DNA from: Octopus bimaculoides
Taxonomy: Eukaryota
Reading direction: 5' to 3'
Length of the DNA stretch: 38,086 bases
Assembly (NCBI RefSeq): GCF_001194135.2
Contig: NC_068982.1
Span: forward strand, 7,717,869-7,755,954
The translations under genes and the position numbers were made by a program. The notes under the pieces were generated by a model, which saw only the letters and a program-made list of their open reading frames with translations, was not told the origin of the DNA and did not search any database. Positions 2,310 to 38,086 of this stretch are shown in pieces. The number at the start of each line of letters is the position of its first letter. Position 1 is the stretch's first letter.

Positions 2310-2614
2310 TTATTGACATCTGCTACATTCACAACTACAAATTTGCGGATAGTACATAACTGTCTTCTCTTGGTCCGGACCACATAGTGCTATGACTTCC
2401 TTAATTTTAGAAGCCTTGCCTTTGCAACACAAGCATTTATTCTCAAATAAAAGATCCAATTGGTCGACGGGTTTCTTTGTAAGTAATGCTGGCTTCACAG
2501 TACTCAGTCCACATTTACCCGAACAGTATGGAACCTTTATTTCAGTAGTTGAGCGACATTGGCTGGTTCTATTCTCCAAATAAGTAAATTCATATTTCAT
2601 TTGACACTGAGCAA
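2310..2614 (-). CDS. Exon 17 (last coding): C-terminal cystine knot (CTCK), AQCQMK...YCSGKC...CLCC...C...ICSCECSRCQ*
   Basis: CxGxC, CxCC and CxCxxC knot motifs, acceptor aaatttag, TAA at 2312-2310. Confidence 0.95.
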
Positions 2615-3765
2615 CTAAATTTAAAAAAAAAAAGCATCTCAATAAATTTCCCGAATCTAGAGAACTATTTAATAATTCAAAAACAATATAGTCATATTGT
2701 CTGGAGAAAGAGTCCTGGTGTTTTAATGCCTTATCTAACTAACAAACTCACCAACGTTCATTGACAAGGATGCAAAAGCAATGAAAAATTTGGAACAAAA
2801 AATATGAGTGGGAATCAAATTGGTGAGCGTGCTAGATAATATGGCATTAAGACATGGTTCTCCACAAACACAACACAATTTGCTTCAACACATGAGTTCA
2901 CATGAAGAATCTTGCAAACCAGGTACAAAAATGAAGTAAATACAGGTATAATTAATACTAGACTACGGGTGACCCATTGGATCACCCGGGAAGTCTGAGT
3001 TTCCCATCAGCAGTTGTTTCACATGCTTTCAGCAAATGTGACATAAAAATCATGCATAAACAGCTCCTTTCTTTGGAAAAGGAAAGATTTGGCTGCTATT
3101 TCTTGTATGCCCTGCTACCACACAACAGGTATTTCAGGTCTTTTTTTGCAAATAGCTGTTACGTGGTAGCAGGGCATGCTAGAAATAGCAGCCAAATCTT
3201 TGGAGCTGAGATATATTGAATGCACTTGAAAAAATTTTTATAATGGTATTCCCTTGGACTCTCGAAACAGTCATCCGGATCAGTTGGTTTTGTTCATTAA
3301 TTTCTGTAAAAATTTTTTATTTAAAGTGCAAAAGAGAAAATGAAAGTTGTATGAATGTATTTGAAATGGATGTGTGTGTGTGTGTATCTGAGAGAGAGTG
3401 CCACTTACACATGAGAACACGCACACATTCACTCACTCACTCGCTCACTCTCTCTCTCTCACATGAGCATACAAAAGATATACACACATGTAGACATGAC
3501 AACACACCCCTTCACTCTCTCTTCCTCACTTTCTCTCACACACACACACACATCTATTTCATATATACTTACATACATCTTTCAGTTTCTCCTCTCTTTC
3601 ATTTTAAAACAAAAGGAAAGAATTTTTTACAGAAATTAATGACTTGAAAATAATTTTTTTAAATATTAAGATATTGTTTGTTTAAAGAAAAAATATAAAT
3701 ACTTACTGTACAAACAACTTATATTTTTGAAATCACAGTGTTAATATTTTTAAATAAAGTAAATT

Positions 3766-3775
3766 NNNNNNNNNN
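3766..3775. other. Assembly gap (10 N)
   Basis: N run. Confidence 0.99.
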
Positions 3776-4138
3776 TCAACGTTTTTTTTTTTTTTTCTTA
3801 GATAACGCAAAGACTATATGTGTGTGTGTGTCATAGATAGTGGACATGTATTTGTGTTGATTGACATGCCAGGACATTCATTATGTGTGTGTGTTTAGTA
3901 TTGACACAATGAGTAAACACAAAAATTGTTTACTCATTTTCATTAATAAATAGAGATCCAAATGTCACAAATTTGTACTGCACTGCCGAAGGTAAGTACG
4001 AAAATAGATATGCAAAATAAAATATACCATTTCTGAGACATTCCAGCTACATACAAACATCTGCAGAGTCTTAGTATTATTAAAATTCAGGTTACTAATA
4101 ACAATTTCAAGTTACATTTCTGACTATGTAATGAAAGT

Positions 4139-4445
4139 GGAGGTGGAATGGCCCAGTGGTTAGGGCAGTGGACTCGCAGTCGAAGGATCGATTCCCAGAC
4201 TCGGTGAAAACACCTAAAGTTCTGGCAGGGGGTGGTGGCAAACCCTGCTGTACTCGTTCACCACAACTTTCTCTCAGTCTTTATTCCTGTTTCTGTTGTA
4301 CCTGTATTTCAAAGGGCCACACTGTCATGCTGAATCTCCCCGAGAACTACATTAAAAGTACACGTGTCTGTGGAGTGCTCAGCCAGTTGCACATTAATTT
4401 CACGAGCAGGTTGTTCTGTTGATCGGATCAACTGGAAGCGCCACC
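4139..4445 (+). mobile_element. Third tRNA-headed SINE-like element
   Basis: tRNA-like 5' end tggcccagtggttagggcagtggactcgcagtcg (A box), GC-richer than the flanks, no coding potential. Confidence 0.6.
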
Positions 4446-4659
4446 AATTATGAAAATTTTTCAGTGTTGAATAAAAAGACCGAATAAAATACATTTATAA
4501 TGATACGTTGTGGAAAAGATTTCAAAAAATGATTCAGTGAAGCTGTCATCTTAGAAAAGACACACTTGACAAGAAAATATAGATAGGATAAAAGTATATA
4601 GCTAAAGAATAATTTTGGAAGATGCAAATTCAATAAATAAATAAATAGAATGCTCTTAC

Positions 4660-4720
4660 AGTTTTTAGGTTTGCAAACTGGACAGCAAGTATTTGAATCT
4701 AAATATATGAGGTCTTCATT
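4660..4720 (-). CDS. Exon 16: VWC end NEDLIYLDSNTCCPVCKPKN
   Basis: 61 nt, phase 0 to 1, tttttaacag / t|gtaaga. CCPxC motif gives a 10-Cys VWC with exons 14-15. Confidence 0.93.
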
Positions 4721-5579
4721 CTGTTAAAAATAAAAGTTGTTATGGAAGTAGAATGTAAAAATATATACAAATATCTGTAAATACTAACATTTTTTTAAAA
4801 TAAATTTTCAAATAAAAGAAATATAACATACAGATAACAATTTCTTTAACCATTGTAATAGAACCTTGGTTCTGTGATACAGAACTGTCAGCTTCAAAGT
4901 GTATTTCACTTCAACTTTTTAGCATTTAAACTAGCCATATTTGGCCAAAATATTCTACTTATTTTTTATATTCAGATCTCCAACAACATTAATCTGAAAA
5001 TTTTCATGATGCAATTGTTTATTTTTAAAGTTATGAGATAATGCATATGTGAAAACATAAGCATTAAATTAAGCAGAAAAAACTTTTATGTTCCAAACAT
5101 CAGTTTCATCATGAAAAAGTTAATTTTGTGAATCTTAACAAATTCTTGATTATATTCAAAATGAAGTGAGACACAGAAAAAGTATATTCCATTAGAAATA
5201 TAGAAAATGTTAGTCTTAAAATGTTCTGTTAGTGATTGTACAATGCTAAATTGGTAAAGGTAGTTTCAAACACTGACAAAAAAATACTGATATATAATAA
5301 GTTTAGCATTACAAAACTTTAAAAGTAATATTTTGAAATAAATCTAATTCTGACTTCTCCATTGTTTGATGTTGTTCAATCACCATCTTTGTGGTCTTTT
5401 ATAGGGAGTTGGTCTCTGCATGACAATATTTGCAAGCGGTGTGGTATTATGGTGTAGTACTAAATAACCAAACCACTTCATTTTCCCACGTTTTAATGAC
5501 TAACTGAAGAGCTTTGTGGTTCACTGTTTTCCCAACAGTGCTTAAGCATAAGTAAAAATGAAATTAAGCTAACACTTAC

Positions 5580-5684
5580 TTCTTGACAGACAGGGATTTT
5601 ACAAATTCTTTCACATTTTATTTTGCCTCTAATACACTGACATAATGTACAATTGTCATCTCTCTTTTTCCATATGTCTTGATT
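5580..5684 (-). CDS. Exon 15: VWC core NQDIWKKRDDNCTLCQCIRGKIKCERICKIPVCQE
   Basis: 105 nt, phase 0-0, ttttttcag / gaa|gtaagt. W-x-CxxCxC-G-C pattern. Not in the ORF track. Confidence 0.93.
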
Positions 5685-8019: not shown

Positions 8020-8183
8020 AATGGAATAAGTAATAAACTTAAAATAAGTTTTGTCACTTGACTGGGGTCAATATGATCAACAAGACTATTCAAGGCTGCC
8101 CCAGTATGGTCACAATCCAATGACTGAAACAAGTACAATCAATGAATAAATACTGATAACAAATTAGAATTCAATTTACTTAC

Positions 8184-8389
8184 CATTTTTATAGTACCAT
8201 TTACTGAACAGGAAAGATCACATTGATCTCTACGAACACATTTACCATTTTTGTCTCTGTACAAACCGTTAATACATTTGCAGCCATAATTCCAATTTTC
8301 ACAGAACGAACTATTTGCAGGAGAAACTAGTTCTTCACATTTGGCTTCACAACCAGCAATAACAGACCATTCTTCCAAATTACTACAAT
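8184..8389 (-). CDS. Exon 14: 8-Cys TIL-like domain plus first Cys of VWC (NCSNLEEWSVIAGCEAKC...GCKCINGLYRDKNGKCVRRDQCDLSCSVNGTIKM)
   Basis: 206 nt, phase 1 to 0, attttcag / atg|gtaagt. Confidence 0.94.
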
Positions 8390-8581: not shown

Positions 8582-8744
8582 GTCTATATAAATATTAACA
8601 GTAAAAGAATTCTAGCACTACACAAGGGATAAGAAGATGAATAGAAGAAAGTTTGAAGAGAGAAGATCAGGAATGGTAGATGGGTAAAGGTTGCCAGAGT
8701 GAGAGGGGTAGCAGTTGATGTAGTGAATGAGGGACAAGAGTGAA

Positions 8745-8746
<2 letters not shown>

Positions 8747-8810
<64 letters not shown>
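8747..8810. repeat. (AT)n microsatellite
   Basis: Uninterrupted AT run. Similar runs near 11066-11094, 23520-23550, 25452-25484 and 33082-33114. Confidence 0.97.
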
Positions 8811-8813
<3 letters not shown>

Positions 8814-9629
8814 AAGCATACAGTCAAAAAGAATTTTCTTTTTTTACAAGTTTCATGAGGAGATAAAGAGGAGAGAGAGATTATTCTGAGACTAGATACC
8901 TAACCTGAATGTCTGCAACAAACTGTAATCTGAAAAAAGAATGCAAGAGCCAAATAAGTGTAAAACCAGGTGACTAATTATGTCTACCACCCTAAACCAG
9001 GATCAATCCAATTCTTCCAAGGGGCTTGTACATAGTCTTATTTGACCAGATATTATTCCCAAGGCCTTGGACAACCCAAGGATATAGGAGGCAGTTGAAT
9101 GTGAGAGGAAGAGATAGGAAAAGAGTGTAGTGAGAAACCTCATAAATTCTTTCCATTTCTTTTATTCTGTGATACTCTTTTGCTCTTGTAAATTTGATCT
9201 TTAATTTTTATTTCCATTTCATTCATATGCAACAGAATATTTTTGATAAGGTCTTTCTCGTTCTATCTACTTCTTTTTTTAATACTCATTTCTATAAGGA
9301 GAAACAATGTTTAACTTTTATTCAACTCAACTTAATGTTTACATACTTTTCTGCTATAGTCAATTACTTTCCTCCAACAGATTCTCTTTGTTTTGGAAAC
9401 TAATTGACCCATCAGCTTTAAATGTTTATTTGGTGAGTTGGTAATTATGAATACTTATAAACACATATAGATTGTTGCCTTGTTCAAATACTCACAACTA
9501 TTTGATGATCAATTATGTGAAACTTACGGAAACAGTTTCTCAAGACATTTTAACTTCAGTAAAATACTATTTTACTCTACCTTTGTTATTTGAGTACTAT
9601 TTCTTCCACCTTGTTGCACTTGTGTGTGT

Positions 9630-9830
9630 CATCATCATCATCATCATCATCGTTCAACATCCGTTTTCCATGCTGGCATAAGTTGGACGGTTTGACTGAG
9701 GTCTGGAGAGCCAGTGGCTGCACCAGGCTCCAATCTGATCTGGCAATGTTTCTATAGCTGGATGCCCTTCCTAATGCCAACCACGCCAAGGGTGTAGTGG
9801 GGGCTTTTTACATGCCACCATATACAGTGA
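9630..9830 (-). mobile_element. RTE 3'-UTR-type repeat copy
   Basis: (CAT)n head on the + strand followed by the shared core. Confidence 0.8.
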
Positions 9831-10544
9831 TGCTGATAAATGCAAAACGATTGATGCCAAACCTAGTCTACATTGCTGTGTGGTTGCACAGTGCACTTCC
9901 CAACCATATAGCTTCAAGTTTGGTCTTACTGCATACGATCATCTACTACAGTCTCAGACCAATGAGAGAAGGTTGGAAGATGGAAACTGTACAGAAGCAT
10001 ATTCTGTGTATGGAGGTGTATACATATATTTATATAAATGCGTGTGTGTGTGTGTGTGTTCATTTTTATGCATAGTTATAAAACAAAAACAATCCACTCA
10101 TAATTGAAATATAACTTAATACATTTATATAGAGCATCACGTTTTTATGCAGAAAAGATTGACAATGACTTCAAAGATCCACAGGTTATTGGTATCATTA
10201 GAATATATATGTGACAGAATGTTTATGTGTGTGCTTGTGTGTGTGTGTATGGGGGTGGGTATGTTGGTATGTGTACAGAACTTTTCCATCCTACATGTCT
10301 TCATATTATCAGAGTTTGAATAAAAGCAGTGATGCTTATTAGCATCTAGAAACAATACATACTGCATCTTGAAATTTCAACAAGTAAAGGCCAATAATAA
10401 AAATACATCATTTTAAGAACAAGTAGGGACTGGTAACAAGAAGGGCATCCAGCCATAGAAAACTGCCTCAAAAAGATTTGTTTGACCCATGCCAGCATCA
10501 GAAAAGCAGAGGTATTAAACAACAACACTGACAATGATATATAT

Positions 10545-11064
10545 CATCATCAAGTTCACTTCCATACTGGCATAGGTTAGATGGTTTGACTGGAACTGGT
10601 AAGCCAGAGAGCTGCACCAGGATCCAGTCTGATTTGGCATGGTTTCTACAGCTGGACACTCTTCCTAATGCCAACTACTCCAAGAGTGTAATGGGTGCTT
10701 TTTACACACCACAGACATGGGTGCCATTTACATGAAACTGGTAATGGCCACAACTACTATTTCACAGGTGCCAATTACATGACACTAGCCATGACTATGG
10801 TTTTACATGGCTTGACAAATCTTATCAAGCCCAGCATATCGCCAAAGTCTTGGTCACTTGTCATTGCTTCTGTGAGGATCATCATTTGAAGATCATGCTT
10901 TACCACCTCACCCCATGTCTTCCTGGGTCTACCTCTTCCACAGGTTCCCTCACCAGTTAGAGATCAGCACTTCTTTACACAGCTGTTCTCATTTATACGC
11001 ATCACATAATCATACCAATGCAGTCGTCTCTCTTGCACTTCACATTTGATGCCTCTTATGCCCA

Positions 11065-11620: not shown

Positions 11621-11776
11621 TGCATTTGTTTTCTAAGTTGCATTTAACAAAGTCATATTTGGTTTTGCACAGCGAATTAGTTGATTCAGTGCTATAGACA
11701 ATAAACTGCCGAAATCGTGTTCCTAAATTGCAATCACCAGAGCAAGAACTCCAGTTAGACCATTGTCCACAAGCAG
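11621..11776 (-). CDS. Exon 13: TSR (spondin-type) ACGQWSNWSSCSGDCNLGTRFR...CNLENKC
   Basis: 156 nt, phase 1-1, cttttgcag / a|gtaagt. Confidence 0.94.
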
Positions 11777-12454: not shown

Positions 12455-12607
12455 CTTCACAGGGCTGTACTTCACAAGTTTTTCTCTCATTAATTGGGTC
12501 TACATCACAATTGTTTTTATCCATGCTCTGTCGCTGTCTTGTTTGAATACCAGGGCCACAACTCGCACTGCAACTCGACCAGAATGACCATGGTGTATAT
12601 GTACAAC
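12455..12607 (-). CDS. Exon 12: TSR (spondin-type) CTYTPWSFWSSCSASCGPGIQTRQR...CEVQPCE
   Basis: 153 nt, phase 1-1, ccttaag / g|gtataa, 6 Cys. Not in the ORF track. Confidence 0.93.
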
Positions 12608-13720: not shown

Positions 13721-13891
13721 AAAATTCTTGTTCATTACAAGGCTTCACTTCAACTGCATCACCAGAGCATTTATCTCCTCCACAACGAGGCAGTGGATTT
13801 GAGCAAAATCTGGTTCTGGATCTTAATCCTCCAGGTTGACAAGAACGACTGCATTCTGTCCATTGTGTCCATTCAGTCCAGTTAGCATGGA
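13721..13891 (-). CDS. Exon 11: TSR (thrombospondin-type) VHANWTEWTQWTECSRSCQPGGLRSRTRFCSNPLPRCGGDKCSG...EQEF(C)
   Basis: Classic TSR motif, 171 nt, phase 1-1, ggttttag / t|gtaagt. Confidence 0.96.
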
Positions 13892-14036: not shown

Positions 14037-14086
14037 CAATAGCATTTGGTTGTGGACGACACATTTCTCTGTAATTCTCACAAATA
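14037..14086 (-). CDS. Exon 10: 50-nt exon (C)ICENYREMCRPQPNAI
   Basis: tttattctag / g|gtaagt, phase 2 to 1. Confidence 0.87.
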
Positions 14087-15234: not shown

Positions 15235-15960
15235 ACATCATTGTCATTGTCATTTAACATCCATTTTCCATGCTGGCATGGGTTGGACAGTTTGACTGAG
15301 GTCTGGAGAGCCAGCGGCTGCACCAGGCTCCAATCTGATCTGGCAATGCTTCTACAGCTGGATGCACTTTTTACATGCCACTGGCACAGGAGCTGGTCAG
15401 GCAGGCCTGGCATTGATCACATTTGGATAGTACTTTCTATGTGCCACTGGCACAGAAGCCAGTCAGGCGGAAGTGGCATCGACCACATTCAAATGGTGTT
15501 TTGTACGTGCCCCTGGCACAGGAGCCAGCCAGGGAACACTGGCATCAACCACGTTCAGATGATGCATTTCACGTACCACCAGAACGGAAGACAGTCAGGG
15601 AGTACTGGCATTGGCCACATTCGGACAGTACTTTTATGTACCACTGGCACCCGTGATATGATATACTTGATATGATATACTTGAAAAGACCTGGTGAGTC
15701 AAGTAAAACCAAAATTGCAGCTGTGGCCAGTGCNNNNNNNNNNATGCCACCGGAACATGAGCCAGTCAGCGGGCACTGGCCACAGCTGCAATTTTGGTTT
15801 TACTTGACTCACCAGGTCTTTTCAAGTATATCATATCACCCGATGCCTCAAGGGTCCTCTTAAATGGGTCGGACATGCAACACTGGCATCAGCCACGGCT
15901 GCGATCTCACGTTAGTTGCTGGGTCTTCTCAATCACAGCATATCTCCAAAAGTCTCAGTC
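15235..15960 (-). mobile_element. RTE 3'-UTR-type copy with internal 66-bp tandem array; spans a 10-N gap
   Basis: Shared core at 15250-15370, then units starting at 15376, 15442, 15508, 15574 and 15639. Confidence 0.78.
15734..15743. other. Assembly gap (10 N)
   Basis: N run flanked by a perfect 66-bp inverted duplication. Confidence 0.99.
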
Positions 15961-16391: not shown

Positions 16392-16643
16392 ATATATTTC
16401 TTTATTACACATAAGGGGCTAAACATAGAGGAGACAAACATGGACAGACAAAGGGATTAAGTCGATTACATTGACCCCAGTGCGTAACTGGTACTTTATT
16501 TATCAACCCCGTAAGGATGAAAGGCAAAGTCGACCTTGGCAGAATTTGAACTCAGAACGTAACAGCAGACGAAATATTGCTAAGCATTTCACCCGGCACA
16601 CTAACGTTTCTGCCAACTCGCCGCTCAAAGGCGGAGAGCTGGC
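16392..16643 (-). mobile_element. Second tRNA-headed SINE family, inserted in the LINE with a 13-bp TSD
   Basis: Head ggcgagttggcagaaacgttag...gttctgagttcaaattc on the minus strand. Direct repeat agaaatgagtgat at 16379-16391 and 16644-16656. Confidence 0.78.
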
Positions 16644-17551
16644 AGAAATGAGTGATGTATTTAAAGGTCTTAACAGAGGATACTAAACCAGAAAATTCAT
16701 CAGAGCAGTGACCCCCATGGAAATACTTCTAAAAAAGACACAGCAAAGATACATTTCAATAATGAACCAAAGATTCCAACCTCGTAGAAAGAAGAAGACC
16801 TATCATGTTAACTTCATTTGGAATTTGATGAAGCAAGTTAGGACGCCCAGAAGAGTTCCCAAAAGGACAGCAAAATTCAATGCAAAGCCAATTGGTGGAT
16901 TTATAGAGATATAAGATATTTTCAGAGATAAGAAATCTGCAAGCTGGAAGAAAGTTCTCCCCTTCTTGGCAGTCAACATCTCGAAAGACTGAACATACTT
17001 GTTCTAAGAGAGATCTTTTGGTCAAAGTCAAACCAAGATGTTGGATACTGTAGCTTTCTAGAATATCATCCCTTCCTATAATGATTACCAAAAGCTTTGT
17101 CTTGCCAGCATTAAAAGTTACCAGCCAGTTGCTAACCAATTCCACGACCATGCAAACATTCACCTTAAGAAAGAAAGCTTGGTCAAGGCAGTTAGTTTTA
17201 ACCGGCTGCTGGCCATCTAGGACCACCTTGATTAGTCAATTTGAAAGAAATGACTTTATGTTAAGAACAGGCCCAGACAGATGACGGCTTCTGAGCTTAG
17301 AGATTAGACCAGGATGCCACACTCTCAACCGCCTTTGAAATATCAAAAGAGATAGCCCTAACTTCAACAGAAGAGCTAAGTGAATGATAGAAATGTTTAG
17401 CTATGACAGTAAGAACATTAGCAGTAGACCCAGATGCATGAAAACTATATTGAAAATCAGGGAAAAGATCGAAAGAGTCAAAGTGTTTGAACAAAGTCAC
17501 CTTAACAATAGACCTTAACAAAAGACATTGATAACCACAGGAAGAAGACTT

Positions 17552-18272
17552 CATCATCATCATCGTTGTTTAACGTCCGCTTTCCATGCTAGTATGGGTT
17601 GGACGATTTGACTGAGGACTGGTGCAACCAGATGGCTACACCAGGCTCCAATCTGATTTGGCAGAGTTTCTCCGGCTGGATGCCCTTCCTAACGCCAACC
17701 ACTCCGAGAGTGTAGTGGGTGCTTTTACGTGCCACTGGCATGAAGGCCAGTCAGGCGGTACTGGCAACAACCACGCTCAAAATGGTGTATTTTATGTGCC
17801 ACCTGCGCAGGAGTCAGTTCAGCAGCACTGGCAACGATCTCGCTCGAATCTCCTTACACGTGCCATCTGGCACAAGTGCCAGGAAGGCGATGACGGGCAC
17901 AGGTGCCATGACGGTTTCGCTTTCGCTTGCCCCAATAGGTCTTCACAAGCCAAGTATCATTTCCAATGAAGGAGACAACGTTGGCATGGGTGCCAGTCAT
18001 CGAATTTAATTCGATTTCCATTTCACTTGCCTGAACAGGTCTTCGCAAGCGGAGTTTAGTGTCCAATGAAGGAAGGTATGTATAAGTGGGCTGGCTGAGG
18101 CCTTCAATTTAGGTCTCATTTGGCTTGCCGGGTCTTCTCACGCACAGCATATTTCCAAAGGTCTCGTTCAGAAGTCATCGCCTCAGTGAGGCATAATGTT
18201 CAAAGGTCGTGCCTCACCACCTCATTCCAGGTCTTCCTGGGCCTACCTCTTCCACAGGTTCCCTCAACTGCT
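17552..18272 (-). mobile_element. 5'-truncated RTE-clade LINE (ORF end plus 3' UTR plus (GAT)n tail) nested in the older LINE
   Basis: Translates EGTCGRGRPRKTWNEVVRHDL...DLWKYAVREKTR and is flanked by the direct repeat agactt (17546-17551 and 18273-18278). Confidence 0.85.
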
Positions 18273-20182: not shown

Positions 20183-20332
20183 CAAATCTCGCAGGCAGAT
20201 TCCCGGATGATGTCATCATTATTATAGCCAAGATCATTTACTATGCAATCAAACGGACAATTTCCCAAGGTACATGTTTCATTTTGAATTAAATATTCAC
20301 TACTGCATCTATTTCCTGAAGTTAACAATTTT
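20183..20332 (-). CDS. Exon 9: C-half of TSR plus start of half-VWC, KLLTSGNRCSSEYLIQNETCTLGNCPFDC...SACEI(C)
   Basis: aatttcag / tg|gtaaga, 150 nt, phase 2-2, open frame that completes the TSR cysteines. Confidence 0.9.
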
Positions 20333-20501: not shown

Positions 20502-20577
20502 CTGTATCGATGCTTCACACCTACTCCACATGTCTGACTGCAGGATCCCCAGCTTGTCCATTCAGCATATTTACAAC
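20502..20577 (-). CDS. Exon 8: N-half of TSR, CKYAEWTSWGSCSQTCGVGVKHRY(R)
   Basis: gttattag / ag|gtgagg, 76 nt, phase 1 to 2. Confidence 0.93.
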
Positions 20578-21631: not shown

Positions 21632-21925
21632 ATATCATCATCATCACCATCCTTTAATATCCACTTTCCATGCTGACATGGGTTGGATGGTTTGACTAAG
21701 GACTGGCAAGCCAGGAGGCTGAACCGGGCTCCAATCTGATTTGGCAAGGTTTCTACAGCTGGATGCCCAACCACTCCAAGAATGTAGTGGGTGCTTTGTA
21801 CATGACACCAGTATGGGAGCCAGTCAGGTAGCACTGGCATTGGCCATGCTTGAATGGAGCTTTTTACGTGCCAGTCAGGTGGTACTGACATTGGCCACAC
21901 TCGAATGGTGTTTTTTACATGCCAC
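21632..21925 (-). mobile_element. RTE 3'-UTR-type repeat copy
   Basis: (CAT)n head, shared core and about two 66-bp-type units. Confidence 0.78.
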
Positions 21926-23080: not shown

Positions 23081-23127
23081 AGTTCTTCGTTATGTTGAGG
23101 CATTCAATGGTACCATTAGAACAAAAG
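23081..23127 (-). CDS. Exon 7: 47-nt exon (C)FCSNGTIECLNITKN(C)
   Basis: gttttag / t|gtaagt, phase 2 to 1, same size and position as exon 3. Confidence 0.9.
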
Positions 23128-23255: not shown

Positions 23256-23505
23256 CATTTCTGACAAGAGAATTGAGACTTTGCTTCAAAGTTTTCCAGA
23301 ATTGATGTTCCATCTTTGTCATGACAGAAACACTTGCTAATCTCAACACAGTGACCATTTTCTTCAAGGAATCCAGAAGGACATCTACATCCAGGTATAC
23401 AAGTGTCAGACTGCTGGCATATATTTTCCCCAATTTTGTGCTCCATGCATGTCATTGGACAAGCATTTGCACAATCAGACCAAACTTTTCCATCTTTACA
23501 AGTTT
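23256..23505 (-). CDS. Exon 6: canonical 10-Cys TIL domain plus start of half-VWC (TCKDGKVWSDCANACPMTC...SCQK)
   Basis: TIL spacing including GCRCPSG...GHCV..SKC, 250 nt, phase 1 to 2, ttttag / tg|gtagga. Confidence 0.95.
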
Positions 23506-26083: not shown

Positions 26084-26251
26084 CATTGCCTTCACACATA
26101 GCTGTCACACATGCTTGGAGTTGAACTGCTTCCCCAATACAGTCTTCATTTAACAAACCATAATTGCAAATTCTTTGCCGTTTTTGAGAACCAACACCAC
26201 AAGTGGCAGAGCACTCACTCCACGAATTCCAAGTAGACCAAGATGGTTTAC
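26084..26251 (-). CDS. Exon 5: TSR/TSP1 (thrombospondin-type) KPSWSTWNSWSECSATCGVGSQKRQRIC...CVTAMCEGN
   Basis: WxxWxxW-CSxTC-G-RxRxC, 6 Cys, 168 nt, phase 1-1, tttaattag / g|gtaatg. Confidence 0.93.
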
Positions 26252-26419: not shown

Positions 26420-26812
26420 GTGGGGAGGGGGTAAGTCAATTACATCGACCCCATTACTCAACTAGTACTTAATTTATCAACCCCGAAAGGATGAAAGGCA
26501 AACTCAGCCTCGGCAGAATTTGAATTCAGAAAGTAGCGACAGGCGAAATACCACTAAACATTTTGCCCAGTGTCCTAATGATTCTGCCAGCTCACCACCA
26601 TTTTTAAAATAGGATTCAAGTTTTGCTACAAGGGCAGCCATTTTGAAGGCAGGGATTAGTTGATTACATCAACCCCAGTGTTTCACTGGTACTTAATTTA
26701 TCAACCCCGAAAGGATGAAAAGCAAAGTCGACCATGGCGGAATTTGAACTCCGAACATAATAATGATGGGCAAAAAACACTACTAAGCATTTAACAATTC
26801 AGCCAGCTCGCC
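26420..26812 (-). mobile_element. Two tandem copies of the second SINE family
   Basis: Each has tcaaccccgaaaggatgaaa(g/a)gcaaa..cg..c..ggc.gaatttgaa and ends ccagctc(a/g)cca (about 26420-26600 and 26640-26812). Confidence 0.78.
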
Positions 26813-27667
26813 ACTGACCGTCAATGAAATAATGATTTGATGAAGTAGGTCTTCCAGTTGCAACTGTGTCTAGCTAAAGATACATTTTTTGTAATGGTTT
26901 ATTATATTGGCATAAGGTTACAGTCTTTTTATACGGAGAAGGAGAGTATAGGTAACTGGATCAACCCAAGCAGTATATGGAATTTTAACTTTCTTGTAAG
27001 AGAAGACAAAGCAATACTAAAGTGAATTGAAATCAATGTAAGATGGTGGAAAGTAGAATCATCAGAACACTGGTCAGAATGCCTCAATAATCATTCTGGT
27101 TCTCTATACTATGAGTTCAAATCTCACTGATATCAACTTTTCTATAATACCCTCGATATAAATAAATAAAGCACCAGTCAAGAACAGGGCTTGTTTCTTC
27201 TCTCCCAAACTTTTACACACACACAGAATTGGCTACAGTGAAGGGACTAAAAAAGGCAGCCTTCATATGAGAGCTCATTAATCCTTTCATCACTATTCCA
27301 TAGACTTAAGGCACAAAAAGGACCCTTAATGCAGAAAGACAACTAAATACAGCTTGGTATTTTTCCTAACCCACTGTTTTTCACACTTCTACAAACCTAC
27401 TGCCCTTTCATTGATTAAATAACATGTATCACCATACAGAAGTCAGTTAGGATTAAATAATGGTTTTATTTTAAATTTTACTCCAAGAAGAGAGTTTTCA
27501 TTCATAACTTTTACAGGTCCCAACAGAAAGACAAATTGCAGTGTTTTCAATGTTGTAGTTACCAGTTACTGAAATGATTTTTGAGTATTCATAAAACCTA
27601 TTTAAAACTCTTTTTACATGATGTATGCTAATCTTATGTGAACCAGACCCTAAATATACTATAACTC

Positions 27668-27892: not shown

Positions 27893-28097
27893 TCATCATC
27901 ATCATCATCATCATCGTCGTCGTTTAATGTCCGCTTTCCATGCTAGCATGGGTTGGACGATTTGACTGAGGACTGGTGAAACCGGATGGCTACACCACGC
28001 TCCAATCTGATTTGGCAGAGTTTCTACAGCTGGATGCCCTTCCTAACGCCAACCACTCAGAGAGTGTAGTGGGTGCTTTTACGTGCCACAGGCACGA
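27893..28097 (-). mobile_element. RTE 3'-UTR-type repeat copy (near-identical to 17552-17735)
   Basis: catcatcatc...gtttaatgtccgctttccatgctagcatgggttggacgatttgactgaggactgg... Confidence 0.85.
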
Positions 28098-29827: not shown

Positions 29828-29986
29828 CTTTGCAAGGGTCAAAATTGCAGTCACTTGATTGTTCTAAAGGCAGGTTACATGGTTCATTTCCTTTTCCTTT
29901 AAAACGTTCTCTGATACGAATACGGTTACCAATATCACAACTTTTACTACATTCTCCCCAGTTACTCCACGAATTATAAGTACATC
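29828..29986 (-). CDS. Exon 4: TSR/TSP1 (spondin-type) CTYNSWSNWGECSKSCDIGNRIRIR...CNFDPCK
   Basis: WSxWxxCSxSC and RxR motifs, 6 Cys, 159 nt, phase 1-1, ttttacag / g|gtaac. Confidence 0.95.
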
Positions 29987-33078: not shown

Positions 33079-33117
<39 letters not shown>

Positions 33118-33466: not shown

Positions 33467-34214
33467 TTTTTTTTCTTTCCTTTTTTTTTCTCCCGGAAGC
33501 ATCTTTGCACTGGTCTCGTGAAGCTCCTTCTGGAATTCCTCATGAGAAGTGCACGAGGGCAGCCATGTCTCAAGCTCGAGTGTGCTGGCATATCTGTAGT
33601 GCTGCTTCAAAGTTATATATGTCTAGATGTTTTCTGAAGGAAGAGGCTCTCGTATTCAGATGTTCTTTGATGCAAACGTGTAATGGTCTTGTTGTGCTAC
33701 CCACATAGAACTTGTTGCATTTGTTACATTGTATTCTATACACATTTACCCATTGGCATAAGTCTGGGTCACGGATGAGACAGTTTGCTAGTGTGCATTG
33801 ATTGCTGTTCTTTGCCCGTTTCTTTGTGAGGTGTCTTCTCAGAGAGGGGCCGGAGTGAGCTAGTTGTATGTCTAGTCCTTCTCTTCTTATGTCTCTTTGG
33901 ATGGGTCACCTTGTCTTCTATCCTGCTGCACTGGCTCTGGATGCATGCAAGTTCATTTATGGATTATCCTAATTTGGCACCAAGTGGAAGTGCTGAACTG
34001 TACTGGACAAACATATCTCTACTGGCTGCTTTCCTGTAGAACTCAGTATGGATCTCTCCTTCTTCCATTATTTTCAGTTGGAAGTCAAGTAGTGATAGTG
34101 ATCCAGTGTTGTCGGGATGTTCTATAGTGAACTTTATGTTCGTGTCCATGTTGTTGAACGTCCTGAATATTCTGTTAGCCTCTTCCTGGGAGGATGTCAT
34201 CTACATACCTACCT
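33467..34214 (-). mobile_element. 5'-truncated, disrupted Penelope-like retroelement (RT C-terminus plus GIY-YIG endonuclease)
   Basis: RYVDDIL at 34210-34190, then IKFTIEHPD..SLSLLDF..FYRK thumb, a Cys-containing linker, and VYRIQCNKCNKFYVGSTTRPLHVCIKEH (VYRIQC 33743-33726, YVG 33707-33699). Contains a stop and frameshifts, with an A-rich tail near 33467-33490. Confidence 0.9.
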
Positions 34215-34305
34215 GGTGAAGAAGGAGAATTTTGCTTATACTGCCAGTATTAATGCATCACTTAATCCTAGAATAAATAAATAAAAAACATAGAAGTCTA
34301 CATAC

Positions 34306-34352
34306 CATGACATATCTTACTAGTGCATTGCAACTTCTTCTTGTCACAAGTA
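34306..34352 (-). CDS. Exon 3: 47-nt exon (C)TCDKKKLQCTSKICH completing the half-VWC
   Basis: Acceptor ttttttccag, donor g|gtatgt, phase 2 to 1. Completes CNNC-TC motif. Confidence 0.88.
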
Positions 34353-34432
34353 CTGGAAAAAATGTTAGATATATATATATATAATATACATATATAGAAG
34401 CATGTATGTGTGTGTGCACGCACACACACACA

Positions 34433-34480
<48 letters not shown>

Positions 34481-34799
34481 GAAGAGGAGTCTGAATAAAT
34501 ACATAACTGCAAGAAACTCAGAACGGCAATGGATGAGAAGCAAAGAGAAAGAATAGCTTTAATTAATGATGATTATTAAATTCACAAAATGATTCAGAGC
34601 CAATGATAGCTAATCCAAAATTTGTGTTACAGTTTTATTTGTTACAATGCAAGATATGACAAATAATTAGTTATAATTAGTTATATTATATATATTGCAT
34701 ATATGTCTGTATATGAAATGTCAATAGCTAACTTTTAATTAAGAAGTCTTAACTTATAATTATTGTAAAGTTAGTACATTTAATATCTTCCTTCCCGTC

Positions 34800-35100: not shown

Positions 35101-35475
35101 AGAGAGAGAGAGTGGCACCAACTAAAGTGGCCAAGTGCCAAAGATAAGAGAAGTGGGCTCTAAACAATGTTATATTTCAATATAAAATGGAAGTAAAAAT
35201 GTAAAATTCCAGTTTTGATCTAAAAATAAATTTTCTGCATTGTTAAAATCCCTAAAATTCATTTTTTTAAAATGTTATACAACATTAAAGTTTTAAAATG
35301 GTTATTTCTCTATACATATATCTGTAAAATCATTCCATGAGTTTCTACTTTAAAATAATATTCTTTCAATCCAAATGAAAGAAAATAAATGTAAACAGGT
35401 CTTCTTTTCCCTGTAATAATTACAGTATAACCCTTAATATTCAATGAAATTCAGTCACACATTTTCTGTACTTAC

Positions 35476-35647
35476 CAGTTATTACACTGAATATAAACTG
35501 TAACACCATCTTCAATTTTATCATTAGCATGCACTACTTCCGCATCACTAGTGACACCTGAAATGCCATCTTTTTCAACCCAACCAACGACATCTCCCGG
35601 AATGAATCCCAATAATAATTCAATTTCACAAGGAGTGAGGGCACAAA
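35476..35647 (-). CDS. Exon 2: VCALTPCEIELLLGFIPGDVVGWVEK...VYIQCNN(C), N-part of half-VWC-like module
   Basis: Acceptor ttttcag, donor tg|gtaagt, 172 nt, phase 1 to 2, no stops. Confidence 0.88.
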
Positions 35648-36949
35648 CTGAAAAATATATTTAAATGGAAATGATACAAAACAGAAAAAAAAATGTAGTC
35701 AAGGATTATAAACAAATAACTGAAAAATAATTAAATAAATGAAATCATGGAAAACAAAAAGGCTGTATCAAAACATATGCATAAAATACTGTAGATAAAA
35801 CATTATCCAAAGAGACTGGTGGCAATCTATATTGGTAAAACTTGTGTTATGTGGAAACAATGTTTCAGACAGTGTCCTTCTTTAAAGTAGAGATGACAGG
35901 TAGGAAATAAAAGACAGAAGAGTTTCATATCCTTTATGGTTGAGAAACTGGTTGCAACTGATGAGTAACTCATGAGAATGTGAGCTTCATACATAGAAAT
36001 GAAGCAGTAGAGAAAGAGAAACTTGGTGAGAGAGAGGGGGAGGAAAGAGAAATAAAACAAAGAAGAAAAACTGAAAAGGAAAAATTTAAGTGGGAGGAAA
36101 GCTGAAGGATAAAAAAAGAGCAAAAGGTAAAATATTCATTCAAAACATTGACAAAAAAAGAACATTTTATATTTGAACTTGAGACCATGTTACCAATAGG
36201 TTTAAACACTTCCCTCACTCTTCTACTTCTACACCTCCTCATAGTTCTGTAAACCCTTTCATGTTCTTCAGCTTTCCCTCTTATCTCAATTTTCCCCTCC
36301 TCTTTTCATTTCCCTTTCATTCTCATTCTCATTCTCTCACCACGTTTCTCTCTCCTATCACTTCCTGTCTACATATGAAGCTCACATTCTTTTGTGTTCT
36401 TCACTAGCTGCCACTTTCTCAAACATACAGGACACATAATTCAGTTATCTTTCTTTTCTTTTTTTTCATTTTGTTGCCTTTTTCTGAAGAAGGACTTTCC
36501 AACACATTGGATATTCTACTCTTCATGGTAATTTTACTCTACTTTTTCTGGCACTTTTTAGAATAATTAATCCTTTACTTCAAGAATAAACCCATAAAAA
36601 TCATGTTAGGGATAGAAATAATACAGATGATAGCAAATATTCTTAGATGCAACTGATAGATAATTTTAAAGTGATGATAATTACATTTAATTACTGAAGC
36701 ATAATACCAAATATATGCTTCAGCAACGCCCCACTCTACTGTAGTCCTTCTCAGTAAAAAGGATCTTAGTCTTACAAGCTGTGTGGTGACCTACTAATGC
36801 TGGTGCCATGCAAAAACCATCCAGTACACACTGTAAAGGGGGTGGCATTATAAAGGGCATCCAGCCATAGAAACAATGCCAAAACTGACATTGGAGCTTG
36901 GTGCAGTCTTTAATCAAAACATTCTATGTTCATATAAACTATCTTATCA

Positions 36950-36951
<2 letters not shown>

Positions 36952-37004
<53 letters not shown>
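36952..37004. repeat. (CT)n microsatellite
   Basis: Direct reading. Compound CT/CA tracts also lie at about 3370-3550, 14409-14495 and 14640-14673. Confidence 0.95.
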
Positions 37005-37008
<4 letters not shown>

Positions 37009-37672
37009 GACACAAATCTGCATACAAATTTATTTGTAATTTTAAATATATGCATGTTGAATGTAATAATACGAGAAAAACATTTAACTTTGAAATGTTT
37101 ATTCCAGTCCAAAATTATGAAAAAGGAAAAGAAAATTAAAATATAACTATTCCACAAAATTATTAGCCATACAAATAGATTATAGGTTAATTTGAGATTG
37201 ATTGAGATGGCATATTGTTCTTTTAAAGGAAGCAGAGGCAGTGAGCCTGCCACAATCCATTGCATGCCAGACAAAATGACTACAAGCATATCTTCTGGCT
37301 TTTCATTCTGAGTTCAAATAGCAACAAGGTTGCTTTTACCTTTCATCCTTTCAGGATCAATGAAATGCATACCAGCTGAGCAGTGGGGGTCAATGTAATT
37401 GACTAGACCCAGCATTAAAATGTGCTTATAGTAGAAAAGATTTTAACAACAGGAAAGGTGATGCTCCAGCATGGCCTCACTTAAATGACAGAAACAAGTC
37501 AAAGAATAAAACAATAAAAGAATGCAAATATAATTAAATAAAATTGAGTGAGCAGAAAGAGTCACAATATTCCTGACAGCAACTTATATCGCTTTGTATA
37601 AAAGGTAAGCATTAGCCAAACGTGTTACAAGTATAAACAAAACTAGAGACAAAATAACAAATGGTGACATAC

Positions 37673-38086
37673 CAGGAGTGATAATAGCTGAAGGAGTAGT
37701 TGTGGCAACAGTATAATTCATCACTGTGACATTTCTAGTGGAAACAGGAGGGAACGGTGGAAGAGTAAGGATAATTTTAGTTACTGGTTTTACAAAGTAT
37801 ATAACTGTTGACGCTGTTATGCCAGTGGTACTTGTAGTTGGTGCTGTGGATGTCGATGGTACAGAACCTGTTGTAGTTGGGGCAGCGGTGGTGGATGGTA
37901 CAGCACTTGTTGTAGTTGGGGCAGTGGTGGTGGATTTTACAGTAGTTGTAGTTGGGGCAGTGGTGATGGGTGGTACAGCACTTGTAGTTGGGGCAGTCGT
38001 GGTGGATTTTACAGTAGTTGTTGTAGTTGGGGCAGTGGTGGTGGTTGGTACAGCACTTGTTGTAGTTGGGGCAGTGGTGGTAGATT
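37673..38086 (-). CDS. Exon 1 in window (runs off the edge): mucin-type Thr/Pro-rich tandem repeat, STTTAPTTTSAVP/TTTTAPTTTTTVK...IITP
   Basis: Open frame of 137 codons dominated by T/P/S/A/V. Ends cct g|gtatgt (phase 1 donor at 37672). Confidence 0.9.
37800..38086 (-). repeat. Coding minisatellite, 36-39-bp units alternating two types
   Basis: Recurrent gtagttggggcagtggtgg on the + strand. Encodes TTTAPTT plus SAVP or TVK. Confidence 0.92.

What the first reader, a model, noticed from the sequence alone, without database searches (positions are those of the whole stretch)
2310..38086. Mucin-spondin hybrid: a PTS mucin repeat fused to six TSRs, two TILs, VWC modules and a cystine knot
Seen: a frame-consistent 17-exon chain with a Thr-rich tandem repeat directly upstream of a TSR/TIL/VWC/CTCK tail. 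It has many N-x-S/T sites (NVT, NYT, NGT, NIT, NET, NWT, NSS, NCT, NRT). Known: a TSR-TIL-VWC-CTCK tail is typical of SCO-spondin (Reissner fibre), while PTS plus CTCK is typical of gel-forming mucins; some invertebrate proteins mixing these have been reported, so novelty is not guaranteed. Inference: a polymerising, O-glycosylated fibre or gel protein, such as mucus, adhesive, egg-coat or haemocyte clotting material, possibly lineage-specific.
Basis: partly seen in the sequence, partly recalled or inferred. Interest (0 to 1): 0.7.

Follow-up and report, generated by a model that had tools for sequence, protein, structure and literature searches.

The report
Octopus mucin gene with SCO-spondin tail
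The window holds the last 17 exons of a giant Octopus bimaculoides gene for a secreted mucus-type glycoprotein, a threonine-rich mucin stretch joined to a tail like that of vertebrate SCO-spondin; the gene is real and already in public annotation, and it belongs to a mollusc-wide family, so it is not a one-off oddity.

Summary
On the minus strand, 17 GT-AG exons (38086..2310) form one frame. They encode a Thr/Ser/Pro repeat, then VWC-like, 2 TSR, TIL, VWC-like, TSR, VWC-like, 3 TSR, TIL, VWC and a C-terminal cystine knot. All three assembly gaps lie in introns, and no exon is lost.

The window is Octopus bimaculoides DNA. RefSeq XP_052831418.1 ("SCO-spondin") is an exact substring of the chain and already joins the PTS exon to exon 2. 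The O. sinensis orthologue ("mucin-2-like", 2478 aa) adds VWD-C8-TIL modules and one LDLa upstream. Its PTS is a single 1,701-codon ORF.

The 758-aa tail is colinear with the last ~750 residues of fish SCO-spondin. Two octopus paralogues share the PTS-plus-tail plan, one of them in tandem ~137 kb away. Bivalve proteins labelled mucin-17-like, mucin-2-like or SCO-spondin share it too.

A peptide of the tandem paralogue's orthologue was identified in published octopus skin-mucus proteomes.

Best reading: a polymerising, O-glycosylated gel-forming mucin of the SCO-spondin lineage. The tissue of expression and the link to the N-terminal part are untested. It is a new member of a known kind, of modest interest.

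The parts
37673..38086 (-). Exon 1 as seen in the window: the 3' end of the large PTS (mucin) exon. It is open at the window edge. It holds the Thr/Pro/Ser tandem repeat (37832-38086) plus a non-repeat linker ending ...TTPSAIITP, with donor G|GTATGT and intron phase 1.
   Evidence: TRF finds periods of 39 and 75 nt. The junction is identical in P0083 and in the O. sinensis protein P0084. In O. sinensis the homologous exon is one 1,701-codon ORF.
35476..35647 (-). Exon 2: first part of VWC-like module 1 (VCALTPCEIE...YIQCNN).
   Evidence: It has a canonical acceptor and donor. It is 49% identical to the same module of paralogue P0004. It gives a half-VWC hit with E 8e-4.
34306..34352 (-). Exon 3: 47-nt mini-exon (C-TCDKKKLQCTSKICH-G) that completes VWC-like module 1.
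   Evidence: It was found by a phase-constrained scan. It is present in P0083 and has the same size class as exons 7 and 10.
29828..29986 (-). Exon 4: TSR1 on a symmetric phase 1-1 exon, with WSNW and CSKSCDIG motifs.
   Evidence: TSP_1 hit with E 5.4e-11. Exon boundaries are and the motifs.
26084..26251 (-). Exon 5: TSR2 (phase 1-1).
   Evidence: TSP_1 hit with E 9.6e-14; boundaries.
23256..23505 (-). Exon 6: TIL1 plus the first part of VWC-like module 2.
   Evidence: TIL hit with E 3.7e-11; boundaries.
23081..23127 (-). Exon 7: 47-nt mini-exon (CFCSNGTIECLNITKNC) that completes VWC-like module 2.
   Evidence: The identification rests on the Cys pattern only; there is no Pfam hit.
20502..20577 (-). 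Exon 8: first half of TSR3.
20183..20332 (-). Exon 9: second half of TSR3 plus the first part of VWC-like module 3.
   Evidence: Half-VWC hit with E 4.5e-4.
14037..14086 (-). Exon 10: 50-nt mini-exon (CICENYREMCRPQPNAI) that completes VWC-like module 3.
13721..13891 (-). Exon 11: TSR4 (phase 1-1).
   Evidence: TSP_1 hit with E 4.2e-10; boundaries.
12455..12607 (-). Exon 12: TSR5 (phase 1-1).
   Evidence: TSP_1 hit with E 1.7e-9; boundaries.
11621..11776 (-). Exon 13: TSR6 (phase 1-1). It lacks the O-fucose consensus.
   Evidence: TSP_1 hit with E 5.9e-7.
8184..8389 (-). Exon 14: TIL2 plus the start of the complete VWC.
   Evidence: TIL hit with E 1.6e-6; boundaries.
5580..5684 (-). Exon 15: middle of the complete VWC.
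   Evidence: VWC hit with E 1.2e-7 and 32.4 bits over exons 14-16; boundaries.
4660..4720 (-). Exon 16: end of the VWC (…CCPVCKPKN).
2310..2614 (-). Exon 17: C-terminal cystine knot (CTCK) and the stop codon TAA (2312..2310).
   Evidence: Cys_knot hit with E 2e-4. The best solved relative is Norrin, E 0.003. Eleven Cys are invariant against the fish SCO-spondin CTCK.

Best explanation
The window contains the 3' ~36 kb (last 17 exons) of a very large Octopus bimaculoides gene, RefSeq XP_052831418.1 "SCO-spondin". Its O. sinensis orthologue is XP_036356620.1 "mucin-2-like". The gene encodes a secreted gel-forming mucin of the SCO-spondin lineage.

Shown here:
- A long Thr/Pro/Ser tandem-repeat exon is spliced in frame to a 758-aa, 12.5%-Cys tail.
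- The tail runs VWC-like, TSR, TSR, TIL, VWC-like, TSR, VWC-like, TSR, TSR, TSR, TIL, VWC, CTCK.
- The tail is colinear with the C-terminal ~750 aa of vertebrate SCO-spondin.
- The tail is under purifying selection.
- The same PTS-plus-tail plan recurs in two octopus paralogues (one in tandem) and in bivalves.
- Peptides of the tandem paralogue's orthologue occur in octopus skin mucus (published proteomics).

Inferred from what is established for VWF, mucins and SCO-spondin:
- The CTCK forms disulfide-linked tail-to-tail dimers in the ER.
- The N-terminal VWD-C8-TIL assemblies, predicted upstream in orthologue models, link dimers head-to-head into polymers.
- The PTS stretch (about 1,700 residues in O. 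sinensis) is densely O-glycosylated and extends into a hydrated bottle-brush.
- The six TSRs carry C-mannose, and five of them also carry O-fucose. All six have WxxW and five have CxxS/TCxxG. They provide binding surfaces for matrix or glycans.

The most likely product is an epithelial mucus gel. The tissue for this particular paralogue is unknown.
For: - Exon chain: all junctions are GT-AG and phase-compatible, and P0083 is an exact substring of the translation.
- Domains: Pfam hits.
- Gaps: all are intronic, and the product is colinear with the orthologue at 89% identity overall, with no residues missing at the gap junctions.
- Orthologue P0084: VWD, 2 C8, 4 TIL, LDLa, an 802-aa PTS and the same tail.
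- Upstream of P0084, a split model has 2 more VWD hits.
- The O. sinensis PTS is one 1,701-codon ORF with 77% T+S+P.
- Tail dN/dS is 0.26 and dS is 0.09.
- The tail aligns with fish SCO-spondin C-termini in a single HSP, and 120+ columns are invariant in alignment A1.
- The N-terminal part scores higher against vertebrate SCO-spondins (34-39% identity, 440-525 bits) than against MUC2/5AC (29-32% identity, 330-415 bits).
- Paralogues P0004 and P0093 have tails of 756 and 754 aa behind different PTS repeats. P0093 lies ~137 kb away on the same chromosome and strand.
- Bivalve relatives have PTS directly followed by the same tail.
- The MS/MS peptide SCSNPLPQCGGK, exact in P0093, was assigned to the "mucin-19-like" protein A0A7E6FK29 in O. 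vulgaris skin mucus (PMC10138644 supplement).
- Literature: invertebrate gel-forming mucins cluster with SCO-spondin (PMC4948705). SCO-spondin-like proteins occur in limpet and snail mucus (PMC7333891; PMC10475054).
Against: - I could inspect no transcript reads. The E1-E2 junction and the link between the VWD/LDLa part and the PTS/tail part rest on Gnomon models.
- The O. sinensis model contains a dubious ~110-aa stretch between LDLa and the PTS.
- No available model has a signal peptide, so every one is N-terminally incomplete.
- No peptide of this particular gene was found in the octopus mucus supplements.
- Bivalve relatives show other domains, not VWD, in front of the PTS. Limpet proteomics reports VWD/LDLa and TSR/CTCK proteins as separate sequences.
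- Glycosylation and polymerisation were not tested.
Confidence: 0.8

Rival explanations
1. The PTS/tail protein is a separate gene product from the upstream VWD-C8-TIL-LDLa part. In this reading the O. sinensis 2478-aa model is a fusion of two adjacent genes. The protein would start with the uncharacterised beta-rich domain, then PTS and tail. It would form CTCK dimers, or bind other matrix and mucus components through its TSRs, and would not form head-to-head VWD polymers.
For: - Bivalve relatives carry repeated ~130-aa Cys-bounded domains, not VWD, in front of the PTS.
- Limpet pedal-mucus proteins P-vulgata_3 (VWD/LDLa) and P-vulgata_6 (TSR/CTCK) were reported as separate sequences.
- P0084 has a low-quality stretch (aa ~650-770) between LDLa and that domain.
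- RefSeq splits the locus into separate models in both octopus species.
Against: - In O. sinensis, consecutive exons from the VWD part to the PTS are never more than ~9 kb apart and lie on the same strand.
- The paralogue's orthologue A0A7E6FK29 is >5,600 aa, with Cys-containing in-silico peptides at residues 172-202 and 1060 and the tail motif at 5617. That implies a Cys-rich N-terminal part in one model.
- Transcriptome assemblies routinely break at PTS repeats.
- The assembly gaps explain the split models.
Confidence: 0.25
2. The molecule is the same, but its job is something other than skin mucus. It could be gut or salivary mucus, sucker or egg-capsule adhesive, oviducal jelly, or a clotting material. 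The three octopus paralogues would then be tissue-specialised.
For: - No peptide of this gene was found in the skin-mucus supplements, while the tandem paralogue's orthologue was.
- The paralogues have quite different PTS repeats.
- SCO-spondin-like proteins act in limpet adhesive mucus.
Against: Nothing positive points to any specific alternative tissue. The supplementary tables are truncated and list in-silico peptides for selected proteins only, so absence there is weak evidence.
Confidence: 0.3
3. It is the strict orthologue of vertebrate SCO-spondin and acts in the nervous system as a secreted fibre or matricellular cue, like the material of Reissner's fibre.
For: - The tail is colinear with the SCO-spondin C-terminus.
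- The N-terminal part is closest to SCO-spondins.
- SCO-spondin immunoreactivity and expression are reported in protostome radial glia-like cells (PMC5543218).
Against: - It has a ~1,700-residue PTS, which vertebrate SCO-spondin lacks.
- It has 6 TSRs and 1 LDLa, against 27 and 13 in chick (PMC8487547).
- Octopus has at least three such PTS paralogues, plus a separate multi-LDLa "SCO-spondin-like" protein A0A7E6F2Q3.
- The paralogue is a mucus protein.
Confidence: 0.07
4. The PTS exon is not part of this transcript, and the frame and donor match arose by chance or from a decayed neighbouring repeat.
For: Only that one in three phases would fit by chance, and that I saw no reads.
Against: - The junction sequence ...TTPSAIITP|VCALTPCEIE is identical in the orthologue model.
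- The same PTS-to-VWC junction is present in two paralogues and in bivalve proteins.
- The donor is strong, G|GTATGT.
- The ORF stays open for 1,701 codons in O. sinensis in this frame only.
- The current RefSeq model uses this junction.
Confidence: 0.03

Closest known systems
Vertebrate SCO-spondin (SSPO, the Reissner-fibre glycoprotein)
   Same: - The last ~750 residues are colinear: TSRs alternate with TIL and VWC-like modules, ending in VWC and CTCK, with 24-31% identity and all framework Cys/Trp conserved.
- The N-terminal VWD-C8-TIL part of the orthologue is closer to SCO-spondins than to mucins, and an LDLa follows the third VWD.
- TSRs carry WxxW C-mannosylation motifs. C-mannosylation is needed for Reissner-fibre assembly in zebrafish, according to the abstract of PMC12063643 as listed.
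   Different: - It has a ~1,700-residue PTS mucin domain, which SSPO lacks.
- It has only 6 TSRs, 2 tail TILs and 1 LDLa, against 27, 12 and 13 in chick.
- No FA5/8C or EMI domain was detected in the parts available.
- It has several paralogues.
- A paralogue is found in skin mucus rather than in CSF.
Vertebrate gel-forming mucins (MUC2, MUC5AC/B, MUC6, MUC19)
   Same: The overall logic is N-terminal VWD assemblies, a long central PTS tandem repeat, then C-terminal VWC and CTCK. RefSeq names for relatives reflect this (mucin-2-like, mucin-17-like, mucin-19-like).
   Different: - The tail contains six TSRs and no VWD4.
- No CysD domain was detected.
- N-terminal sequence similarity is lower than to SCO-spondin.
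Octopus "mucin-19-like" A0A7E6FK29 / LOC115224399, the orthologue of the tandem paralogue XP_052821910.1 (P0093)
   Same: It has a PTS followed by the same 754-aa tail, 44% identical to this gene. Its O. bimaculoides counterpart lies ~137 kb upstream on the same strand. The peptide SCSNPLPQCGGK was identified in O. vulgaris skin mucus.
   Different: It has a different PTS repeat unit (TPSTTAS against STTTAPTTTTVP/K). It is a paralogue, not an orthologue. No protein evidence was found for the window gene itself.
Bivalve PTS-TSR-CTCK proteins: Dreissena XP_052247765.1 "mucin-17-like", Magallana gigas A0A8W8MB95 "SCO-spondin", Mya XP_052779568.1, Ylistrum XP_060082502.1, Argopecten XP_069111486.1 and Mactra KAL4226408.1
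   Same: The PTS runs straight into [I/V]C...G[W/Y][I/V]xKD (a VWC-like module), then 5-6 TSRs, TIL, VWC and CTCK. Identity over the last 276 aa is 31-38%.
   Different: In front of the PTS they carry repeated ~130-aa Cys-bounded domains of unknown fold, and no VWD appears in the available models. All are uncharacterised predictions.
Limpet pedal-mucus proteins P-vulgata_3 and P-vulgata_6, and Cornu aspersum "Spondin1"
   Same: They are mollusc mucus proteins with SCO-spondin-type domains: VWD/C8/TIL/LDLa in one and TSP1/CTCK in the other. Spondin1 has Ser/Thr-rich regions and is 12% Cys.
   Different: I could not compare their sequences here. The limpet N- and C-type proteins were reported as separate sequences.
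Insect hemolectin / hemocytin
   Different: It has F5/8C domains and a 3+2 VWD plan, with no TSR array. It did not appear among the tail relatives.

Membership tests
SCO-spondin family | C-terminal region of TSRs interspersed with TIL and VWC-like (SCOR) modules, ending in VWC and CTCK, colinear with SSPO | tested here: met
   A single HSP joins tail residues 182-895 to the C-terminal ~750 aa of fish SCO-spondins. The 5-sequence alignment has 120+ invariant columns. Pfam finds 6 TSP_1, 2 TIL, VWC and Cys_knot.
SCO-spondin family | Three N-terminal VWD-C8-TIL assemblies | tested here: inconclusive
   This part lies outside the window. O. sinensis P0084 has 1 VWD, 2 C8 and 4 TIL, and the adjacent upstream split model has 2 more VWD hits. 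The Argonauta relative has 3 VWD, 3 C8 and 4 TIL. All are predictions, and linkage to the tail is not verified by transcripts.
SCO-spondin family | Cluster of LDL-receptor class A repeats after the VWD region (13 in chick) | tested here: not met
   Only one Ldl_recept_a hit was found, in the orthologue (E 2e-5) and in the Argonauta relative. The chick count comes from PMC8487547.
SCO-spondin family | [quoted passage not shown] | tested here: inconclusive
   No such Pfam hit appears in P0084, P0096 or P0097, but all of these models lack the true N-terminus. The beta-rich domain before the PTS gave only a low-confidence model (pLDDT 58) with no significant PDB match.
SCO-spondin family | Secreted by neural or ependymal cells and assembled into Reissner's fibre | not testable with these tools
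   No expression data could be queried.
Gel-forming mucins | Long central Pro/Thr/Ser tandem-repeat domain | tested here: met
   The window shows the tandem array at 37832-38086 and 137 aa with 63% T+P+S. The orthologue has a 1,701-codon ORF with 77% T+S+P.
Gel-forming mucins | C-terminal cystine knot for dimerisation | tested here: met
   Cys_knot hit with E 2e-4, Norrin E 0.003, and 11 Cys conserved against the SSPO CTCK. Dimerisation itself was not tested.
Gel-forming mucins | N-terminal D1-D2-D'D3 (at least 3 VWD-C8-TIL units) | tested here: inconclusive
   The evidence is the same as for the SCO-spondin row.
Gel-forming mucins | CysD domains and/or a C-terminal VWD4 (MUC2/MUC5 type) | tested here: not met
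   There is no Mucin2_WxxW hit and no VWD in the tail.
Gel-forming mucins | VWD region groups with vertebrate mucins rather than with other VWD proteins | tested here: not met
   SCO-spondin hits score 440-525 bits at 34-39% identity, against 330-415 bits at 29-32% identity for MUC2/5AC. This agrees with Lang et al. 2016. No tree was built.
Gel-forming mucins | Dense O-glycosylation and gel formation | not testable with these tools
   This needs biochemistry.
Mollusc PTS + TSR/TIL/VWC/CTCK proteins (unnamed group seen here) | PTS running directly into the VWC-like module [I/V]C...G[W/Y][I/V]xKD, followed by the ~750-aa tail | tested here: met
   Seen in the window chain and in P0084, P0093 and P0004, and in P0295, P0296, P0327, P0326, P0342 and P0301.
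Hemolectin / hemocytin | 3+2 VWD plan with F5/8C domains and no TSR array | tested here: not met
   Six TSRs are present and no F5/8C was found.

The most novel reading that the evidence does not exclude
Molluscs (cephalopods and bivalves) share a so far undescribed family of giant mucins. Its C-terminal ~750 residues are module-for-module homologous to the C-terminus of SCO-spondin, and it carries a conserved, unclassified Cys-bounded beta-rich domain in front of the PTS.

If these proteins are the main epidermal or ciliated-epithelium gel-formers, they would be a direct molecular link between external mucus and Reissner's fibre. That is the "Reissner's fibre as remnant of a mucociliary sole" idea quoted in PMC5543218. 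The window gene would be one tandemly duplicated member of the family.
Probability: 0.4. Interest if true: 0.55.

Novelty: new member of a known kind. Interest (0 to 1): 0.3.

Why it matters
For annotation, the result shows three things.

- The old RefSeq model began with a transposon ORF.
- The current model starts at an internal Met of the PTS exon.
- The true gene is several times longer and is broken by assembly gaps in the repeat.

For biology, it adds a well-resolved exon map. TSRs sit on symmetric phase-1 exons, and three homologous 47/50-nt mini-exons close the VWC-like modules. The map belongs to a mollusc-wide group of mucins whose tail matches SCO-spondin. This supports the published view that invertebrate gel-forming mucins and SCO-spondin share an origin.

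It also gives concrete targets for asking how cephalopod mucus, adhesives or egg coats are built: unique peptides, probes, and the CTCK and TSR modules. None of this overturns current understanding.

Tried and rejected
- Bacterial-style ORF listing only served to spot exon fragments.
- My first rough concatenation missed three mini-exons and gave a misleading 91% identity to P0001. Exact splice mapping resolved this.
- A search for a C.C pattern for the missing VWC exon failed because the first Cys codon is split by the intron. A phase-constrained scan found the exon.
- Exon-versus-intron conservation against O. sinensis is a weak test, because introns are also 88-92% identical. I used dN/dS instead.
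- The search for homologous proteins never returned proteins longer than ~1,600 aa, so it missed the giant mollusc relatives. The exhaustive HMMER search with the last 276 aa found them.
- I searched two octopus skin-mucus papers' supplements for accessions and peptides of this gene and found nothing. Only the paralogue was found.
- Structure prediction of the domain in front of the PTS gave pLDDT 43 from a single sequence and 58 with 15 aligned copies. Foldseek against the PDB gave no match with E below 0.006, so there is no assignment and F5/8C is neither shown nor excluded.
- The tRNA scan was empty.
- TE-like ORFs at 16756-17563 gave no Pfam hit.
- The hemolectin, thrombospondin, CCN and ADAMTS readings were rejected, because none has the colinear TIL/VWC/CTCK tail.

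Full report
**What the window is.** The 38,086-bp window is AT-rich eukaryotic DNA with three N-gaps. Its exons translate with 100% identity to Octopus bimaculoides RefSeq proteins. It matches base for base the stretch 9636-47721 (reversed) of locus L001, which comes from chromosome CM046602.1 (7.71-7.77 Mb) of assembly GCA_001194135.2. There the window is flanked on both sides by further assembly gaps. The gene lies on the minus strand.

**Check of the observation: exons.** Stop-to-stop scanning of the minus strand shows a Thr-rich open frame at the window edge and a series of Cys-rich fragments. I fixed the splice sites of 14 exons using XP_014768038.1 (P0001) as a guide; all are GT-AG. A phase-constrained scan then found the 47-nt exon 34352..34306, which completes the first VWC-like module.

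It translates without stops into 895 residues. The current RefSeq protein XP_052831418.1 (P0083, 774 aa) is an exact substring of that translation.

**Check of the observation: domains and motifs.**
- Pfam finds six TSP_1 domains (E 6e-7 to 1e-13) and two TIL domains (E 4e-11 and 2e-6).
- There is one complete VWC (E 1.2e-7, above the cut-off), two N-terminal half-VWCs (E about 5e-4 to 8e-4), and one further VWC-like module recognisable only by its Cys pattern.
- The cystine knot scores just under Pfam's cut-off (E 2e-4).
- The cystine knot aligns with Norrin among solved structures (E 0.003). It shares 11 invariant Cys with the fish SCO-spondin CTCK.
- The PTS is a true tandem array with periods of 39 and 75 nt.
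- The visible 137 residues are 63% Thr+Pro+Ser. There are 14 N-x-S/T sequons, WxxW motifs in all six TSRs, and the O-fucose consensus CxxS/TCxxG in five of them.

**The gaps.** The three gaps fall in introns 4, 9 and 16. The spliced protein is colinear with the O. sinensis orthologue through all three junctions. O. sinensis genomic DNA aligns across the 3766-3775 gap and up to both sides of the 15734-15743 gap. No exon is hidden in a gap, and the reading frame does not depend on gap lengths.

**Exon anatomy.** Five TSRs sit on single symmetric phase 1-1 exons of 153-171 nt. TSR3 is split over two exons. Each of the three truncated VWC-like modules is closed by a 47- or 50-nt mini-exon with phase 2 in and phase 1 out. 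This is the signature of module duplication.

**The rest of the gene.**
- The cluster of P0001 contains the O. sinensis orthologue XP_036356620.1, "mucin-2-like" (P0084, 2478 aa).
- P0084 carries VWD, two C8, four TIL and one LDLa, then a ~130-aa Cys-bounded beta-rich domain, an 802-aa PTS (50% Thr) and the same tail.
- In the O. sinensis genome the gene spans 92 kb. The neighbouring upstream model (900 aa, VWD-TIL-VWD) looks like its missing N-terminal part.
- The PTS there is one uninterrupted ORF of 1,701 codons, open in this frame only, and it ends in the same ...TTPSAIITP|G donor.
- In O. bimaculoides the repeat is shattered by assembly gaps. This explains why RefSeq starts the model at an internal Met of the PTS exon.
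- The older model started at a transposon ORF in intron 3.
- A caveat applies. Every available model lacks a signal peptide, and the part of P0084 between LDLa and the PTS is of doubtful quality. The physical link between the VWD region and the PTS/tail is therefore predicted, not shown.

**Selection and family.**
- Between the two octopus species the tail has dS 0.09 and dN/dS 0.26.
- O. bimaculoides has at least two paralogues with the same plan: XP_014769815.1 (P0004) and XP_052821910.1 (P0093).
- Their tails are 756 and 754 aa, 37% and 44% identical to this one, and sit behind quite different PTS repeats.
- P0093 lies ~137 kb upstream on the same chromosome and strand, which indicates tandem duplication.

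**Relation to known families.**
- Tail residues 182-895 align in a single HSP with the last ~750 residues of fish SCO-spondins.
- The multiple alignment shows framework Cys, Trp, Gly and Arg columns invariant throughout. It has two local module differences.
- The N-terminal part of the orthologue is closest to proteins named SCO-spondin-like in cephalopods, gastropods, hemichordates and echinoderms.
- That N-terminal part also scores higher against vertebrate SCO-spondins than against MUC2/MUC5AC.
- This agrees with Lang et al. 2016, who found invertebrate gel-forming mucins most similar to SCO-spondins (PMC4948705).

**Distribution outside cephalopods.** The word-indexed protein search returned nothing longer than ~1,600 aa. 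I therefore ran the last 276 aa through the exhaustive HMMER library.
- Colinear C-terminal hits include bivalve proteins from Dreissena, Magallana, Mya, Ylistrum, Argopecten, Mactra, Sinanodonta and Tegillarca, and a crinoid SCO-spondin-like protein.
- Several of the bivalve proteins have a long PTS running directly into the same VWC-like module and tail.
- The architecture is therefore mollusc-wide, not cephalopod-specific.

**Function.** There is no direct evidence for this gene.
- For the family, a high-confidence MS/MS peptide (SCSNPLPQCGGK) was assigned to "mucin-19-like" A0A7E6FK29 and to the O. bimaculoides entry A0A0L8FUW4. The peptide is exact in paralogue P0093, and the assignment comes from the O. 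vulgaris skin-mucus proteome.
- That protein ranks 11th in one of the authors' supplementary tables (PMC10138644).
- The window gene has FCSNPLPRCGGDK at the homologous place. None of its peptides or accessions occur in the supplements that I could search.
- SCO-spondin-like proteins are also reported from limpet adhesive mucus and snail mucus.
- The mechanism I propose is CTCK dimerisation, N-terminal VWD multimerisation, an O-glycosylated PTS brush and glycosylated TSRs as binding modules. It is inferred from what is established for VWF, gel-forming mucins and SCO-spondin (PMC8487547).

**Verdict.** The gene is already annotated, under inconsistent automatic names. Its kind, SCO-spondin-related invertebrate mucins, is published, and the same plan is widespread in molluscs. 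No member has been characterised functionally, and I found no open paper that describes the PTS-plus-SCO-spondin-tail family as such. I rate it a new member of a known kind, with modest interest.

Noticed in passing
window 33573-34200 (minus), inside intron 3: A transposon remnant with two ORFs. One has a weak GIY-YIG endonuclease hit (E 5e-4), consistent with a Penelope-like element. The older RefSeq model XP_014768038.1 used the other ORF (34149..33981) as a false first exon with a weak donor.
   Followed up: partly
window 37673-38086; L001 1-9635: The window starts and ends at assembly gaps. In assembly GCA_001194135.2 the PTS array continues beyond a 2.2-kb gap (L001 7141-7399, 84-86% identical repeat units). 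Three more gaps break it up, so RefSeq splits the gene into at least two models and the true PTS length in O. bimaculoides is unknown.
   Followed up: partly
L002 51354-51891 (O. sinensis); P0084 aa 785-916: A ~130-aa domain bounded by one Cys at each end sits just before the PTS. Similar Cys-bounded units are tandemly repeated in front of the PTS in bivalve relatives (P0301, P0326, P0327, P0342). There is no Pfam hit. AlphaFold gives an all-beta model with pLDDT 58, and there is no significant PDB match.
   Followed up: partly
L003 (CM046602.1 7.89-7.98 Mb): Paralogue XP_052821910.1 lies ~137 kb upstream of the window gene in the same orientation, as a tandem pair. It has a (TPSTTAS)n PTS. 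Its O. vulgaris/sinensis orthologue is the "mucin-19-like" protein detected in skin mucus.
   Followed up: partly
window 184-339, 17551-17743, 27905-28097; also 9636-9769, 10530-10663, 15236-15369, 21636-21769; 16452-16622, 26426-26596, 26650-26820: Several families of short interspersed repeats (130-200 nt, 60-96% identical, both orientations) fill the introns and the 3' flank. Many copies also occur in the O. sinensis locus. No tRNA-like gene was detected by ARAGORN.
   Followed up: partly
window about 36119-37404 (intron 1): About 1.3 kb of intron 1 has no counterpart in the O. sinensis alignment. There, the PTS exon block (to L002 66451) abuts the block that starts at window 36119. This is probably a lineage-specific insertion.
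   Followed up: no
window 37812-38084 (+) and 37780-38085 (-, other frame): The repeat is also open in an antisense frame (a Gly/Ser/Cys/Trp-rich 91 aa) and in a second sense frame (102 aa). In O. sinensis only the PTS frame stays open over the whole array, so these frames are by-products of the repeat.
   Followed up: yes
window 16756-17563 (minus), intron 9: Two ORFs of 156 and 88 aa look like transposon remnants but gave no Pfam hit.
   Followed up: partly
window 8621-8843, 34261-34572, 36913-37029: Long dinucleotide microsatellites, (TA)n, (CA/TG)n and (GA)n, lie in introns. They produce spurious Cys-rich or Glu/Arg-rich ORFs in six-frame scans.
   Followed up: no
window 1079-2018 (minus), 3' flank: Candidate poly(A) signals lie 291 nt (ATTAAA) and 656 nt (AATAAA) downstream of the stop codon. 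Which one is used is unknown.
   Followed up: no
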